Below, one piece after another: positions 2,042 to 57,247 of a DNA stretch of 64,000 nt. Every line of letters starts with the position of its first letter. Positions within the stretch are counted from its first letter, which is position 1. The stretch is from Mytilus californianus (lineage: Eukaryota), in the NCBI RefSeq assembly GCF_021869535.1, contig NW_026262701.1, positions 111,600,001 to 111,664,000 of the forward strand, written 5' to 3'. The notes beneath the pieces are model-generated. The model ran no database searches. It was given only the letters and a program-made list of their open reading frames with translations, and was not told the origin of the DNA. The position numbers were made by a program, and so were the translations under genes.

Positions 2042-5000
2042 CTACAACCACATCATAGTAATAATAATAATAATAATATTTATTCAGGTAAGGCAATATA
2101 TAGAGAATATCATATGGCTTTTTCAATATCACACCTGTATCAACCCGAGACACCAATATAATCCCAAGAGCTCTGCTCGAGGGATTATATTGGTTGAGGG
2201 TTGATACAGTGTGCGATATTGAAAAAGCCATATTATATACATGTACCTCAAGTACAACTAATCTCTCTTATGTATTTTTCACGAGACATGACGTCATACA
2301 TATAAGGGGTTTGATAAAGGTTTTGTTACCGTGACTGATATCGATTACGTGACATCATAAAGATGAGGGGTTAGATAAACCTTTTGAAACCGTGACTGAT
2401 ATCAATATCATCACGGATGGCTGATACAGCAGGATTGTCATTAATTGTATCACACATACAATTTACCTGTATTTACTACTAAGTATATAATTAATACAAA
2501 TACATAATAAGGTTTAGAAACTTAGTTAAATACAACCTTAAAATATAGCAATGGTTGTGACTTTAGGTACCTCTAAAGCCTTAACCCAAGGATGACCCAT
2601 GAAAGCAAACAAGCTTATTTCCAATGGGGTCCTTATAGTCTTGATAATAAAATAAATAATTTATCATTCGATTTTACAGCAATAAATAGTATCCATGAAT
2701 CACAGCTTAAAACAAACATTCGTATAAAAAGCAATCTAATAAAATATAAATCTGCTTCTGACATTGACTTTACATAACTTGACAACAATCAAATACTGTA
2801 AATTCAGAAATTTTGTGATAAATGTAAGATTACCTTTTATTTGAACTTTCATCTGAAATTCTACAAGCACTATTTATATGCACATTTTTGTGAAGTTGCA
2901 TTAACTAAATAATATTGTATATTTGTCTATCAAATTTATCAGAGCATCCAATATGAACAGTTATTGATCCCTTCTATTCACAAATTATTACAACTATCAG
3001 AAATTGTATCAAAATGTTCCATGTAATATTGAAGTCATCTTTTTATAATAGGTAAATTTAACACTGACAGTTGACTCTTGCTTATTTTCTTTTACTATAA
3101 ACATTCAAGTAACCTCTCTAGAAGCATCTTCAGACAAATTATTCTGCAGCTGAAGTTTTCAATCAAACATTATTTTAGCCTATTTTGTCCGGTTGTGCCA
3201 TTTTCCTATATTTTTTACTTAATCTGAATTCACATGGCAGGTGATGCATTAACACAGAAGTTTATTCTGTCAATTTTTAAAGTTGATGCAATTATCTCTG
3301 TTTTTTTTTTTCATTTGCTTTGTATATTCAAAATGGATTAACAAGTTTCAAACATTGGAAAACCATGATTGGAACACATACCTGTAGAAATGTATTATCT
3401 GATTGTCGGCAAACACATTGTTGTAATGTGTGACATCTCTCACCCAACCTTGTACCATTCCCTTCAAAATTCTATAAATAGAAACGTTAATTGATAATAT
3501 CTGACATCCAATAACACTTAATGATGCATTCAAAGCCTAGTCCTTTGCCCAATATAATAAATATTACATTTGTATCAAGCTTGCCAAATATATGATTAGA
3601 ACTCTGCTATAACCTTTAAGTATTTTCACACTTATATTTCCAAAATCCTTATATGATCTTATATAATTAGATATTAAAATCAAACAATGGTACAAACTAA
3701 AATCTTAAACAGTATTTCTACAATAACTTCAATTTATACTCATTCCTACCTGAATGTTGCTGAACACAAAGCCGTTTCATCATAGCTAGCTAAATAGGTG
3801 GCAGCACCTTGTCCCTGAACCATTTCCTCCAATGATGTCTGCGGCAGTGTATCAAAACTAACAGCACTGGCACCTTCCTGGTCATTTACATGTGCAGACT
3901 ACAAGACATAAAAATGTGTTTAACAGCACGTAGCAATACTTGATTAACCATCATTTCAATATACAATGTATGTTTCAATAGTCACTATTACATTATACTT
4001 TTTTTATAAATTCTAAGCAGAAAGTTAAAAATACACTATAAATGGGAGATAACTAGGGTTATGCATTATAAAATCATGATTGATTTTGGTGTTACATTAT
4101 CTCCCTTCCAACGTAATTACTGTGAAAAATATATTCAAAATGCTCACATATTATAACTCATCACTGATAAGCTGCTGACCAAATTAAAAGTTGCTCTGTT
4201 AAATATATAACTGAGAAAAGTGTGATGGAAATATTTGTTGGATGAAAAGACCAATGGACGCTTTTGCTAAACATAGTATATTGAGAATTATACTAGGCTC
4301 TGTTCATACGCTGTTTTAGATTTATTATTATATTTTTTCTTATTATTCTTCATTATTCAAGGTCTAATTCTACTGTTTAAAAATGTGTGAGTCTTCCAGG
4401 GAAACCCCCAAAATCGCTCAGATCAAAAACAAAAGCTAATAGAACAGGTGCTCCAACAGAATTGATCCTTGTATGTTTCCCAAACTTCACTGTCAAGTGA
4501 TATAATACATACCTCTGTAATTGTTTTAACAGCAATGCCTAACTTAACAGAGAGTATAAGACAGTGTATGTGTGTTTGTGTGTCAGTTTAATAGATCAGT
4601 ATAAATACCTCTATAATAGTATTTACAGCCAGACTAGCAATGTCTAGCTCAACACAGACTGTAGGAAAAGCTCCAGGATGATTCAATTCACAACTGGTAC
4701 TCTCTTCCAATTCTGTACATAGCCTGAAATCAAACAAGGGTCATGTAAGGTCACTTGTGCAGGACCATACATGCAATACAGTACTAATAGTATATATTAA
4801 CTTCCTTGATATTGATTGATTGTTGTTTGCTTAACATCCAGTGCCAAATATTTCAGACATGTTCAGGACGAGAACTTATTAACAATAAATACAATAAGTA
4901 GGTCCTGCAATAGGGGGTCGACCAGGGGATGGGTTGGAAATTTGGAATGCCACTTGAAAATGAGGCTATCCTTGATAGACCTGAGTGATTTTATATTCTT

Positions 5001-55300: not shown

Positions 55301-57247
55301 AAATGAACTTAGAATGGAGTCAGAAGAATTGTATCAAAAAGCAAAACAGGTAAATAATAGCAGCTTAAGTATTGAATGTGTACCGATACTTAGTGCATAC
55401 ATTGAAGTTAATTTGTTTGTTAGGAGAGGGATTGTTAATTGTTTGTTTAAGGATTTACCTAACCTTGATTCTAGATTTTCAGGAGGGGGGTATTTAAATT
55501 GAAAGTTTCATGCTTTTTTTTTTCATTCTCCCAAACTTACAAAATACAAAATCCCTGAAATATATATAAAACATATCTTCTAGTTAGATATTATTTTATA
55601 CAGAAATGATTTGTATTGGTATTCTTGTTGATTTATTCTTGAAAGCAAGTTATTGGTCTGATTGGTTGTCTTTTTCCGGAGGAGCACTACACAAATTTTG
55701 GGCTTGACATATTGCACAAGAAACCATTCTATTTAGGATTTGTATGTTGACTTCTAATCCACTTTTCTTTTTATTCTGGAACATAATATAGATGTTATAC
55801 TAGTATTGGTGCAATATTTTATTCATATTAAACATTGACAATGTGCTTTCTGTTTAAAATAAAATTATATAAATACTATAGCAGCTGATTGGAAAATGTT
55901 TTTCACACAAATAACTTTATGGAACTTAACCTATGCAAACAGTCAATTCCAATTAGTTTGTTTTGCCTTTTCGCCATAATCTGTAAGAATTATATTTTGA
56001 AACATTTTGAATCAGCTGTTTCAACACTACAATGTGTTTCATCATCATAAAAGAAAAAGACCTATCTAAACGACTCTAGAGGGAAAAGAAAGTTAAGTAA
56101 AACAGATGACTAAACTATAGGAGATATCCTGTATCAATGGTTGTACAACAATGTTTGTCCATTTGGATATCTTGAGACTGTTTAGATGGCAAAAAGGACG
56201 AAACGAATATCACTGATACTGTCTTTCCAATCAGACGGGTCTACTACGATGATGTTCATTGCATATCCAAATTGTTTATAACTAACATTTACAGAAGGAT
56301 AATAAATAATTATACAAGGAAAGAATACCTTTTGAACCCCCTCTGTTGACAAAATAAGCATTGACATACATGAAGGGGGTCCAAAGGGAAGTCTTGCTGC
56401 AGAAGAAAATACTTCCTGTAATAAAACAGTAAAGCTACCCGGTTTATGCATTTATGTCTTGTAAGATTGGTTTTTTTTTTCACTCTTGACCAACCCCTAA
56501 ACTTAATATTAAAAATCTGTAAACCATCAAGTTAAAGAAACCCTGGACTTGGCTTAAACATGAATTATTTCAGTAGTTATCACATCACTTTGACTGCATG
56601 TTCATTTGCCTTATAGGGTGTCAATTAGTGGATACAGGTTACAATTGTACTGTTACACACTTTCTGACACAAACCTTGATATTTTCAATATCATTGACAG
56701 CTGTTCAGAGAATCAAAACACAAATAAATGTAGAATATGATTTAACATGCAGTGGCAAATATTTCAATATCCAGGATGAAAAAGAGCTATGAAATAATCA
56801 ATTAAGAATGTGGTTTGTAAATGATAATGACATAGAAACTGAGAACAACACATTATACATGTACCATTAAGACATATAGAGGTCAACTAACAGCGTGCAA
56901 TGGTCTTTTGGCTAAATGCCATCTGATATTGGTTGCTATATAAAGGTTTGGTGTTGGCTAAGAAATAATTGTAAATTAGCTTTTATATTACTTTTTAAGG
57001 TATTACCAGGTAATACTTTTTCAATAACTTTTTTCTTATCCATGAAGGTAATATTATACAGTATATTAAACCTTTGATTGTTTTGTAGCTAAATAGTGGT
57101 GATATATATTAAAATACTTTTGACTATGTTTTGTAGATCCATGAAGGTGATATTGTTTATCAGTTTAATGGTCCCACAGAAACACCTCCTCCAGATGACT
57201 TTGACTCACCTGATGGACAATATATAGATACAAGTAGAAAGTGGTAG
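46254..57247 (+). CDS. MRPL40: 39S mitochondrial ribosomal protein L40, 5 exons, 216 aa
   Basis: AEPMKRRKKVD, ERRALLVKEW, ALNELRMES, GPTETPP...PDGQYID match the family pattern; phases are consistent. Confidence 0.92.
47236..47316 (+). CDS. MRPL40: MRPL40 exon 2
   Basis: LCCSCGVTRQFHTNSNPLLFYTTPNL(S). Confidence 0.85.
47925..49360 (+). mobile_element. 5'-truncated Penelope-like retroelement (RT C-terminal half plus 3' UTR), probably Naiad-type
   Basis: IGIPMGTNCAP, FRYLDD, FLDL, YDKRDDF..., YGVYISQLVRFAR; the ORF stops at 48719 with no GIY-YIG after the RT; ends in cattccccatttccattctcaatttta. Confidence 0.88.
47940..48719 (+). pseudogene. Reverse transcriptase fragment (259 aa, open)
   Basis: RT motifs from GIPMG onward plus thumb; N-terminal half missing. 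Confidence 0.85.
49580..49753 (+). CDS. MRPL40: MRPL40 exon 3
   Basis: AEPMKRRKKVDLSK...LKPVEEITGNIALRRNR. Confidence 0.93.
50104..50374 (-). mobile_element. Short HINE-like element
   Basis: Reverse strand begins aacaagaatgtgtccatagtacac; ends with (gac.)n microsatellite and gggcataaaaa. Confidence 0.7.
50745..51400. repeat. About 33-bp intronic minisatellite
   Basis: ttggggttcagcaaaatccatggtgttgtagata and variants. Confidence 0.92.
51605..52152 (-). mobile_element. 3' UTR-only copy of a related Penelope-like family
   Basis: Shares blocks with 48900-49120 (ggggagggttgag..ctcataaacatgtt.aaccccgc...caagtcaggagcct). Confidence 0.75.
52497..54690 (+). mobile_element. HINE-like element with a ~130-bp satellite array and internal hairpins
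   Basis: SubTIR tacgaccgca (52523) / tgcggtcgta (54673); array 52985-53810; (gac)n; 3' palindrome; a 5' fragment of the same family at about 28012-28100. Confidence 0.8.
52834..52978. repeat. About 145-bp fold-back palindrome, end of an element nested at about 52690-52985
   Basis: About 54-bp arms aatgactgtaatattttttctgtctat...gtggtgca, inner stem aataacc/ggttatt. Confidence 0.9.
54688..54809. repeat. 58-bp direct duplication (period 64) at the HINE 3' junction
   Basis: aaacgagtagtcaggactcatgaat.caagcttcacccatttattgccaccaagatct x2. Confidence 0.9.
55151..55349 (+). CDS. MRPL40: MRPL40 exon 4
   Basis: KLRREFEPLEIEEIERRALLVKEWGHY...ALNELRMESEELYQKAKQ. Confidence 0.95.
57137..57247 (+). CDS. 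MRPL40: MRPL40 exon 5 (stop)
   Basis: IHEGDIVYQFNGPTETPPPDDFDSPDGQYIDTSRKW*; AATAAA at 57258. Confidence 0.93.
   Translation: MHEGDIVYQFNGPTETPPPDDFDSPDGQYIDTSRKW

What the first reader, a model, noticed from the sequence alone, without database searches (positions are those of the whole stretch)
4495..57160. Tandem duplications are systematically anchored on splice junctions in POLE and MRPL40
Seen: by manual count about 16 of about 98 junctions have tandem copies that include or abut the splice site. These are POLE donors of exons 4, 6, 8, 17, 20, 30, 32, 34, 38; acceptors of exons 5, 21, 22, 29, 36; and MRPL40 acceptors 3 and 5. Only about 6 non-TE tandem repeats lie away from junctions, although introns make up most of the DNA. 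Units are 25-106 bp, copy number 2 to about 37, and ages range from near-identical to heavily decayed, so the process is recurrent. Arrays always grow into the intron and leave one intact exon. Inference: a mutational process targeted to exon-intron boundaries. Candidates are transcription/splicing-coupled breaks, slippage at the compositional step, or reiterative, telomerase-like copying of junction-spanning pre-mRNA by the Penelope-like RTs abundant here. It would be a source of new splice sites, introns and exons. Caveat: I searched hardest near exons.
Basis: partly seen in the sequence, partly recalled or inferred. Interest (0 to 1): 0.85.

Follow-up and report, generated by a model that had tools for sequence, protein, structure and literature searches.

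The report
Splice-junction "mirage" minisatellites in mussel POLE
In the California mussel's DNA polymerase epsilon gene, seven or eight repeat arrays are built from copies of the gene's own exon-intron junctions; this is more than chance predicts, but it is a kind of repeat already described ("mirages") in amphioxus and in a few human genes.

Summary
The window is Mytilus californianus (100% identical to GCA_021869535.1). It holds POLE exons 1-41 on the minus strand and MRPL40 on the plus strand.

**Observation: partly confirmed.**
- Only 7 are clear arrays that span a junction: A5, D6, D20, A21, A29, D30, D32. A22 only abuts.
- The other 8 are decayed two-copy repeats. These are as common in plain intron (8/82 junction windows against 9.6% of intron windows).

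**Enrichment of the strong arrays is real.**
- Window: 7 of 17 arrays span a junction against 1.9 expected (P=0.001).
- Counted as junction-derived loci in whole genes that were not chosen for their arrays: amphioxus POLE 9 against 3.0, abalone POLE 6 against 2.1 (combined P=6e-5).

**Kind: already described.** These are "mirage" minisatellites, known from amphioxus Adh3, globin and PGBD5, and from human F7, IFI6, CBS, LMNB2 and PDGFA.

**Mechanism.**
- The Penelope-RT idea has no support.
- Junction-derived arrays have more copies and are not GC-richer. This fits ordinary DNA-level duplication followed by preferential amplification or retention. The cause of that bias is unknown.

Other notes of this scan list similar arrays in other genes of this genome (UPB1, RIMOC1, WDR7, NPHP4, CDC45); I did not verify them.

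The parts
1951..44991 (-). POLE (DNA polymerase epsilon catalytic subunit), exons 1-41; the gene runs off the window start
   Evidence: tblastn plus splice refinement against P0235 and P0286; the 1846-aa ORF is 99.9% identical and gapless to M. californianus XP_052060150.1
45246..57247 (+). MRPL40 (mL40), 5 coding exons: 45246-45277, 47236-47316, 49580-49753, 55151-55349, 57137-57247. It lies head-to-head with POLE.
11197..13489 (-). D32 mirage: 62-bp unit x37, made of the last ~54 nt of exon 32 plus GTAAGT(TT). The authentic donor (last exon base 13434) is the first copy. It is followed by 36 decoys, 35 of them with GT intact. A decoy would shift the reading frame.
   Evidence: 4 copies in M. 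coruscus, 1 in M. edulis
15305..16101 (-). D30 mirage: 25-bp unit x32 (with 50- and 75-bp higher-order periods), made of ~18 nt of the exon 30 end plus ~7 nt of intron. Authentic donor: last exon base 16084.
   Evidence: 2.9 copies in M. coruscus
18027..18610 (-). A29 mirage: 85-bp unit x6.9, made of 19 nt of intron end plus the first 66 nt of exon 29. The authentic acceptor (first exon base 18092) is the last copy. Six decoys lie upstream, all with a polypyrimidine tract and AG.
   Evidence: 3 copies in M. edulis, 1 in M. coruscus
25027..25293 (-). A21 mirage: 66-bp unit x4 (98% matches), made of 36 nt of intron plus 30 nt of exon 21. Authentic acceptor at 25056. Using a decoy would bring in an in-frame stop.
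   Evidence: amplified only in M. californianus
25824..26247 (-). D20 mirage: 106-bp unit x4 (95%), made of 74 nt of the exon 20 end plus 32 nt of intron. Authentic donor: last exon base 26174.
   Evidence: unit-to-unit joints are present in contigs of two other individuals; amplified only in M. californianus
39554..39677 (-). D6 mirage: 31-38-bp unit, 3 copies of the donor cag|GTAATA. Authentic donor: last exon base 39653.
38319..38602 (-). Decayed arrays (26-, 65- and 91-bp periods) at the far end of intron 6. Their units still carry the D6 junction (GATATCAG|GTAA).
   Evidence: score 18-20 against a maximum of 14-15 for about 98 non-adjacent junction probes
40479..40564 (-). A5 mirage: 40-bp unit x2.1 (80%). 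The decoy acceptor is dead (TAA in place of TAG). Authentic acceptor at 40492.
   Evidence: 48 bp x4.2 in M. coruscus
24189..24333 (-). 52-bp x2.8 array ending 2 nt upstream of acceptor 22. It abuts the junction; derivation from the junction is not shown.
   Evidence: score 14 against a null maximum of 12; also present in M. coruscus
7563..7699 (-). A36: decayed two-copy tandem duplication (~72-bp offset, ~78% identity) across the acceptor at 7594
40675..40825 (-). D4: decayed two-copy duplication (~80% identity, ~85-90-bp offset) across the donor at 40792
57012..57167 (+). MRPL40 A5: weak two-copy repeat (~78% identity over 55 nt) that includes the exon 5 start. It scores at background level.
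16384..17303 (.). 147-bp satellite x6 in intron 29. Not junction-derived. It belongs to a dispersed family with a second array in intron 41.

Best explanation
These are 'mirage' minisatellites: tandem arrays whose unit is a piece of exon plus the adjoining splice signal.

**Inferred origin.** Small tandem duplications arise all over the introns by ordinary DNA-level events, such as replication slippage or end joining at 0-2 nt of microhomology. A duplication that crosses a donor or an acceptor is harmless. The exon-proximal copy stays in use: the first donor, or the last acceptor. All further copies fall inside the intron.

**Inferred growth.** Arrays then grow and shrink by slippage or unequal sister-chromatid exchange.

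**Shown.** Multi-copy arrays that contain a junction are 3-4 times more frequent than uniform placement predicts, and they reach higher copy numbers than other local arrays. Decayed two-copy repeats show no preference for junctions.

**Inferred reading.** The excess reflects preferential amplification or retention of junction-containing units, rather than an origin aimed at junctions. What drives that bias is not known. It might be engagement of the decoy splice sites during transcription, or protection of exon-anchored arrays from deletion.
For: **Anatomy.** Each junction array starts inside the exon (donors) or ends inside it (acceptors), and reiterates intact GT or polypyrimidine-AG signals.

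**Clean edges.** D32 has a 2-nt (TT) microhomology. D20 is exactly 4 x 106 bp. M. edulis D5 is 20 x 48 + 2 bp.

**No dispersed copies.** Units of the junction arrays have no copies elsewhere in the locus, except within the same intron (D6; M. edulis D45 and A49). The 147- and 165-170-bp satellites do.

**Enrichment (arrays that span a junction).**
- window: 7/17 against 1.93, P=0.0012
- whole californianus gene: 9/24 against 2.85, P=6.6e-4

**Enrichment (junction-derived loci).**
- californianus: 9 against 2.7, P=3.6e-4
- coruscus: 7 against 2.2, P=0.003
- edulis: 4 against 1.4, P=0.04
- amphioxus: 9 against 3.0, P=3.3e-4
- Haliotis: 6 against 2.1, P=0.014

**Copy number, junction-derived against other arrays.**
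- californianus: median 4.0 against 2.7, P=0.004
- Haliotis: 17.5 against 3.4, P=0.003

**Two-copy class.** No enrichment.

**Recent, lineage-specific turnover**.

**Silent decoys are expected.**
- The ORF is colinear with RefSeq.
- Decoy use would shift the frame or bring in a stop.
- One PacBio transcript contig joins 26174 to 25056, the authentic pair.
- In human F7, only the most upstream of identical donors is used (PMC1557585).

**Precedent.** Amphioxus mirages (PMC3087553, PMC3902484).
Against: - The cause of the excess is not identified, and 'amplification bias' is an inference from small samples.
- The decayed two-copy class may be collapsed old arrays rather than a record of origins.
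- The null assumes uniform duplication along collapsed introns. It keeps satellite-type arrays as trials, which makes the test conservative but is arbitrary.
- The californianus gene was flagged because it looked odd, so only amphioxus and abalone are unbiased replicates. All tests use one gene, POLE.
- Array-bearing donors match the splice consensus slightly better (7.06 against 6.43 of 9, P=0.003). That would fit a splicing-linked process better than a neutral one.
- Decoy silence in M. californianus itself was not shown. RNA reads over POLE were too sparse, and the PacBio contig is about 93% identical, so it probably comes from another mussel.
- Copy numbers of 37 and 32 were not checked against long reads.
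Confidence: 0.68

Rival explanations
1. A mutational process really is aimed at exon-intron boundaries. Breaks or stalled forks arise where RNA polymerase II and the spliceosome pause at splice sites, and their repair duplicates the segment around the junction.
For: - The excess is for inclusion of the junction itself, not for nearness to exons. Non-junction arrays lie a typical 200-2600 bp from junctions.
- Donors and acceptors are both hit.
- Array-bearing donors are slightly stronger matches to the consensus.
- The excess is seen in three phyla.
Against: - Decayed two-copy duplications, the nearest thing to a record of origins, are no commoner at junctions than in plain intron.
- No direct evidence of breaks or pausing is available.
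- MRPL40, next door and also expressed, has no such array.
Confidence: 0.22
2. There is no real enrichment. The pattern is chance plus ascertainment: the reader looked hardest near exons, and this window was chosen because it looked unusual.
For:
- In M. edulis alone the excess of spanning arrays is not significant: 4/16 against 1.69, P=0.07.
Against: - TRF detection is blind to exons and still gives P about 1e-3 in the window.
- Amphioxus and abalone POLE, not chosen for their arrays, give a combined P of 6e-5.
- Two junction arrays lie in exons 42-51, outside the window.
Confidence: 0.07
3. Penelope-like or other reverse transcriptases copy junction-spanning pre-mRNA over and over, telomerase-style, and the product is integrated.
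For: A retroelement-like ORF lies in MRPL40 intron 2 (47907-48716). Its nearest Atlas clusters carry HTH_animal and RVT_1.
Against: - That ORF has no Pfam hit, and no link to any array was seen.
- Arrays sit in place and in register with the gene, at both donors and acceptors.
- They have no terminal polarity, poly(A) or element sequence.
- The same structures exist in human genes (PMC1557585).
Confidence: 0.02
4. The arrays are kept by selection because they do something, for instance decoy U1/U2 sites or exon-derived enhancers that tune POLE splicing or expression.
For: - Decoys in young arrays are intact.
- Junction-derived arrays have high copy numbers.
- Mytilus donor units are almost all exon plus the minimal signal.
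Against: - Arrays differ wildly between sister species: 37, 4 and 1 copies at D32; 1, 1 and 19 at D5.
- Older arrays decay freely: D30 decoys are mutated and the A5 decoy is dead.
- Intact decoys are explained by youth.
- Using a decoy would destroy the reading frame.
Confidence: 0.06

Closest known systems
Amphioxus 'mirage' minisatellites (Adh3, troponin C, globins BflGb6 and BflGb9, PGBD5): Canestro et al. 2002 as cited in PMC3087553; PMC3902484
   Same: - Tandem repeats whose units span an exon-intron boundary, at either 5' or 3' boundaries.
- Units of 10-160 bp, variable copy number, splice signals reiterated, normal mRNA.
- I found 9 such loci in B. floridae POLE itself.
   Different: - A different phylum (Mollusca). 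Another follow-up note of this scan (s1-281997) found no report in molluscs, and my two Mytilus and junction-repeat searches found none either.
- Mytilus donor units carry very little intron (about 2-9 nt in 5 of 6), whereas amphioxus POLE units carry 35-133 nt.
- Up to 37 copies here.
Human F7 IVS7 37-bp VNTR and its like (IFI6/6-16, CBS IVS13, LMNB2, PDGFA): PMC1557585
   Same: - The first monomer spans the exon-intron boundary.
- The authentic donor is followed by identical pseudo-donors, which normally stay silent.
- Copy number is polymorphic.
   Different: - The human cases are isolated examples, one per gene. Here 9 junctions of one gene carry arrays.
- Acceptor-side arrays are as common as donor-side ones.
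- Silence of the decoys is not shown experimentally here.
Intron gain by tandem duplication of an AGGT-containing exon segment (Rogers model; PMC4974935, PMC2891723, PMC2812944)
   Same: A tandem duplication that reiterates splice signals could in principle create new introns or exons.
   Different: No new intron or exon is seen. All 51 exon lengths and positions match between M. coruscus and M. edulis, apart from annotation noise at arrays. The duplications start from existing junctions, not from inside exons.

Membership tests
Mirage / splice-junction-spanning minisatellite | Head-to-tail tandem array with a unit of roughly 10-200 bp | tested here: met
   TRF finds periods of 25-106 bp, 2.1-37 copies and 80-98% matches
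Mirage / splice-junction-spanning minisatellite | The terminal unit contains an authentic exon-intron boundary, so the splice signal is reiterated inside the intron | tested here: met
   The exon map is overlaid on the arrays. Units match the adjacent junction probe far above all ~98 non-adjacent probes. Decoy motifs are listed.
Mirage / splice-junction-spanning minisatellite | Only the exon-proximal site is used and the mRNA is normal | tested here: inconclusive
   The ORF is colinear with RefSeq. One PacBio RNA contig joins the authentic D20 and A21 sites, but it is about 93% identical and probably from another mussel. M. californianus RNA reads over POLE were too few.
Mirage / splice-junction-spanning minisatellite | Unstable copy number between haplotypes or close species | tested here: met
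   D32 has 36, 4 and 1 copies; A29 has 7, 1 and 3; D5 has 1, 1 and 19; D20 and A21 have 4, 1 and 1 (californianus, coruscus, edulis). Variation within the species was not tested.
Intron gain by tandem duplication (Rogers model) | A new intron bounded by the duplicated AG|GT, absent from relatives | tested here: not met
   The exon count and exon lengths are conserved among three Mytilus species. The arrays lie in existing introns.
Transposon-borne or dispersed satellite | The same unit is found at other, unrelated places | tested here: not met
   Junction arrays have no far hits, except within their own intron. The 147-bp and 165-170-bp satellites do have them.
Reverse-transcriptase (Penelope- or telomerase-like) reiterative copying product | Polarity, element-derived flanks or RNA-template marks; dependence on the element | tested here: not met
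   Donors and acceptors are hit about equally. Edges are plain genomic sequence with 0-2 nt of microhomology. The same structures occur in human genes (PMC1557585). Dependence on the element across taxa could not be tested.

The most novel reading that the evidence does not exclude
Exon-intron junctions are preferred seeds, or preferred amplifiers, of minisatellites across animal phyla (molluscs and cephalochordates). A splice-site-linked process, such as transcription- or spliceosome-coupled instability at reiterated splice signals, drives this. Mirages would then be a systematic, genome-wide class of structural variation and a steady supply of decoy splice sites, new exons and new introns, rather than scattered curiosities.
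Probability: 0.25. Interest if true: 0.75.

Novelty: new member of a known kind. Interest (0 to 1): 0.45.

Why it matters
Junction-spanning minisatellites put dozens of perfect decoy splice sites next to essential exons of a replication gene. They are natural experiments on how the spliceosome picks one site among identical ones.

They have also been proposed as raw material for new introns (PMC3087553). So far they are known from single-gene anecdotes.

The excess measured here is the new part. Between 21% and 50% of POLE intron minisatellites are junction-derived in five species of three phyla, against about 5-15% expected. Junction-derived arrays also have more copies. If a genome-wide test bears this out, it would point to an unexplained link between splice signals and tandem-repeat dynamics.

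For annotation it has a practical side. Such arrays mislead gene predictors. M. coruscus exon 38 is one example, and my own exon mapper slipped at exon 20.

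Tried and rejected
1. **MRPL40 intron 2.** tblastn hinted that the sequence upstream of MRPL40 acceptor 3 copies the end of exon 2, which would be a signature of intron gain. 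DNA alignment shows no similarity (score 13), so I dropped it.
2. **GC content.** Junction-derived arrays are not GC-richer than other arrays, so I rejected composition as the cause of the excess.
3. **Assembly artefact.** Rejected on independent individuals and independent assemblies.
4. **Self-blastn.** It under-reports repeats inside arrays. I replaced it with TRF plus a Smith-Waterman scan.
5. **Loci I could not fetch.**
   - The Dreissena and Mercenaria POLE genes are longer than 100 kb, so no DNA was returned.
   - The M. galloprovincialis and M. trossulus isoforms are not on record.
   - The Canestro 2002 paper (PMC117041) is not held.
6. **RNA reads.** The M. californianus RNA reads were too sparse over POLE to test decoy use.
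7. **Lingula POLE.** It has only 4 arrays and is uninformative.
8. **M. edulis D5 donor.** The idea that the D5 duplication strengthened the donor was not pursued. The ancestral state is ambiguous, since M. californianus has GTAAGT there.
9. **Second gene.** A test on a second M. californianus gene was not possible with the look-ups allowed.

Full report
**What the window is.** The reverse complement of window 1-46991 is 100% identical to M. californianus GCA_021869535.1, record JAKFGE010000005.1.

POLE lies on the minus strand. I mapped 41 coding exons with the M. coruscus protein P0235 and refined every splice site. The joined exons give 1846 aa with no stop, 99.9% identical and gapless to the M. 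californianus RefSeq protein P0286.

MRPL40 lies head-to-head with POLE on the plus strand and has 5 coding exons. The window therefore holds 88 junctions.

**The arrays.** TRF (and my own run on the sense strand) finds 17 non-exonic arrays of period 12 or more in the POLE part. Seven contain an authentic junction:

| Junction | Unit x copies |
|---|---|
| D32 | 62 bp x37 |
| D30 | 25 bp x32 |
| A29 | 85 bp x6.9 |
| A21 | 66 bp x4 |
| D20 | 106 bp x4 |
| D6 | 31-38 bp x3-4 |
| A5 | 40 bp x2.1 (found on one strand only) |

An eighth array ends 2 nt from acceptor 22.

- Reading the sequence shows the D32 unit to be the last ~54 nt of exon 32 plus GTAAGT(TT).
- There are 36 decoy donors at D32 (35 with GT intact), 30 at D30 (some mutated), 3 at D20, 6 decoy acceptors at A29 and 3 at A21.
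- Using a decoy would shift the frame. At A21, where 66 nt keeps the frame, it would bring in a stop.

I scored every junction by local alignment against its +/-400 bp flanks. D34 is at background.

After setting the TRF arrays aside, the remaining eight cases (D4, D8, D17, D38, A36, A22's partner repeat, MRPL40 A3 and A5) are decayed two-copy repeats. Such repeats are equally common at random intron positions:
- 80-nt windows: 8/82 junction windows against 153/1598 control windows, Fisher P=0.54
- 60-nt windows: 9.8% against 5.8%

About 30 comparable loci lie inside introns. MRPL40 has no junction-derived TRF array.

**Is the excess of strong arrays more than chance?** My null collapses every array to one unit and places a unit of that length uniformly along the collapsed introns or across a junction. 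The chance of spanning a junction is 3-30% per array, depending on unit length.

| Gene | Arrays spanning a junction | Expected | P |
|---|---|---|---|
| Window (POLE part) | 7 of 17 | 1.93 | 0.0012 |
| M. californianus, whole gene, 51 exons | 9 of 24 | 2.85 | 6.6e-4 |
| M. coruscus | 6 of 24 | 2.15 | 0.013 |
| M. edulis | 4 of 16 | 1.69 | 0.07 |

A second test does not depend on array edges. I aligned each array's doubled consensus to the adjacent junction probes, using all non-adjacent junctions of the gene as the null. Arrays that are junction-derived by this test:

| Species | Junction-derived arrays |
|---|---|
| M. californianus | 11 of 24 |
| M. coruscus | 7 of 24 |
| M. edulis | 6 of 16 |
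| B. floridae | 10 of 20 |
| H. rufescens | 9 of 42 |

- Several arrays that look purely intronic are displaced junction copies. In the window, the intron 6 arrays at 38319-38602 still carry the D6 junction.
- Counted as independent loci, the two genes that were not chosen for their arrays give 9 against 3.0 (amphioxus, P=3.3e-4) and 6 against 2.1 (abalone, P=0.014). The combined P is 6e-5.
- The test is conservative, because dispersed satellites (147 bp, 165-170 bp) are kept as trials with large placement probabilities.

**Turnover.** I counted copies of a probe made of 24 exon nt plus 12 intron nt in the adjoining intron:

| Junction | californianus | coruscus | edulis |
|---|---|---|---|
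| D32 | 36 | 4 | 1 |
| A29 | 7 | 1 | 3 |
| D20 | 4 | 1 | 1 |
| A21 | 4 | 1 | 1 |
| D5 | 1 | 1 | 19 |
| D38 | 1 | 3 | 1 |

D45 and A49 are amplified in M. edulis (16 and 7 copies), and weaker arrays sit there in the other two species. At least 11 of the ~100 POLE junctions carry an array in one or more of the three species.

**Not an artefact.** Contigs assembled from short reads of two other individuals cover 25886-26003 and 26080-26215. These stretches cross unit-to-unit boundaries of the D20 array, with 0-1 differences. The contigs also cover the outer edges of the A21 and D20 arrays. Independent assemblies of sister species carry arrays at the same junctions. The exact copy numbers of 37 and 32 remain unchecked by long reads.

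**What it is.** The literature search found the kind at once.
- Borensztajn et al. [quoted passage not shown] They list IFI6 (25 pseudo-sites), CBS, LMNB2 and PDGFA as further cases. Only the most upstream of the identical donors is used.
- Ebner et al. [quoted passage not shown] They cite earlier cases in Adh3 and other genes, note that both 5' and 3' boundaries are affected, and state that the mechanism is unclear.
- PMC3902484 adds amphioxus PGBD5.

The POLE arrays meet the structural definition of a mirage. Only the silence of the decoys is unproven for this species. A PacBio transcript contig joins 26174 to 25056 and so skips every decoy, but it is about 93% identical and probably from another mussel. 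M. californianus RNA reads were too few.

**Mechanism.**
- *Shown: plain DNA edges.* Array edges are plain genomic sequence. D32 has a 2-nt microhomology, D20 is exactly 4 units and M. edulis D5 is 20 units plus 2 nt.
- *Shown: no polarity, no mobility.* Donors and acceptors are hit about equally. Units have no copies elsewhere. This is what DNA-level duplication and unequal exchange give. It offers nothing for copying by a Penelope-like RT, and the human cases also argue against that idea. The retroelement-like ORF at 47907-48716 has no Pfam hit and no link to any array.
- *Shown: more copies, not more GC.* Junction-derived arrays have more copies than other arrays in all five species. The difference is significant in M. 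californianus (median 4.0 against 2.7, P=0.004) and in Haliotis (17.5 against 3.4, P=0.003). They are not GC-richer.
- *Inferred.* Duplications arise everywhere, and those that include a junction are more often amplified or kept. I cannot say why.

Two observations are small-sample leads only:
- Array-bearing donors match the consensus slightly better.
- Mytilus donor units carry almost no intron beyond the splice signal.

**Other notes of this scan.** They list junction arrays in UPB1, RIMOC1, WDR7, RFK, NPHP4, CDC45 and UFD1 of the same genome, and other follow-up agents also filed them as mirages. I did not verify these. They suggest the phenomenon is genome-wide in this mussel, which only a genome-wide test can show.

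**Verdict.**
- The excess of strong arrays is real and repeatable across phyla for POLE.
- The kind is already known.
- The proposed RT mechanism is unsupported.
- Whether the origin is aimed at junctions remains open.

Noticed in passing
window 44921-45277: POLE and MRPL40 start head-to-head, with 254 bp between the two ATGs (44991 minus strand, 45246 plus strand). The same POLE/mL40 neighbourhood appears in M. coruscus, M. edulis, Dreissena, Haliotis and Lingula, so it looks like an old bidirectional gene pair.
   Followed up: partly
P0005, P0288, P0289 (Heterodera trifolii): Gene models from this cyst nematode hold four tandem copies of the POLE exon-19-like segment together with read-through intron. 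This is a tandem duplication of a whole POLE exon region in an unrelated animal.
   Followed up: no
window 24649-24862 and 26254-26574: Very high-copy interspersed repeats sit in POLE introns 21 and 19. Summed contig depth reaches about 1.2 million in DNA runs, and they are abundant in RNA reads, with many loose ends. They are probably SINE- or MITE-like elements.
   Followed up: no
window 44940-44970: POLE exon 1 holds an in-frame 15-bp x2 tandem repeat ([10 protein letters not shown]), also present in M. coruscus. It is an example of a tolerated duplication inside an exon.
   Followed up: no
window 16384-17303; L003 48858-49490: A 147-bp satellite is present in two different POLE introns. 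A 165-170-bp satellite family occupies several introns of M. coruscus and M. edulis. These are dispersed, transposon-type arrays, unlike the junction arrays.
   Followed up: partly
L001 63371-63726 (M. coruscus): A 101-bp x3.5 array covers the whole of exon 38. The deposited M. coruscus model has a 46-nt exon there, against 115 nt in the other species, so the array probably misled the annotation.
   Followed up: no
window 1189-1374 (-) and 63699-63884 (+): Near-identical THAP-domain ORFs lie in inverted orientation at the two ends of the window (Pfam THAP, E=4e-4, just under the curated cut-off). They are probably copies of one transposon family.
   Followed up: no
window 47907-48716 (+): A 270-aa retroelement-like ORF lies in MRPL40 intron 2. 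It has no Pfam hit, and its nearest Atlas clusters carry HTH_animal and RVT_1. Whether it is Penelope-like was not established.
   Followed up: partly
window 50704-51367: A 33-34-bp x~20 minisatellite in MRPL40 intron 3 is not derived from any MRPL40 junction.
   Followed up: partly
L005 (Haliotis rufescens POLE): The abalone POLE introns hold very large minisatellites: 22 bp x191, 31 bp x168, 17 bp x74 and 33 bp x55. Six loci are junction-derived: D5, D7, A22, D28, D40 and A49.
   Followed up: partly
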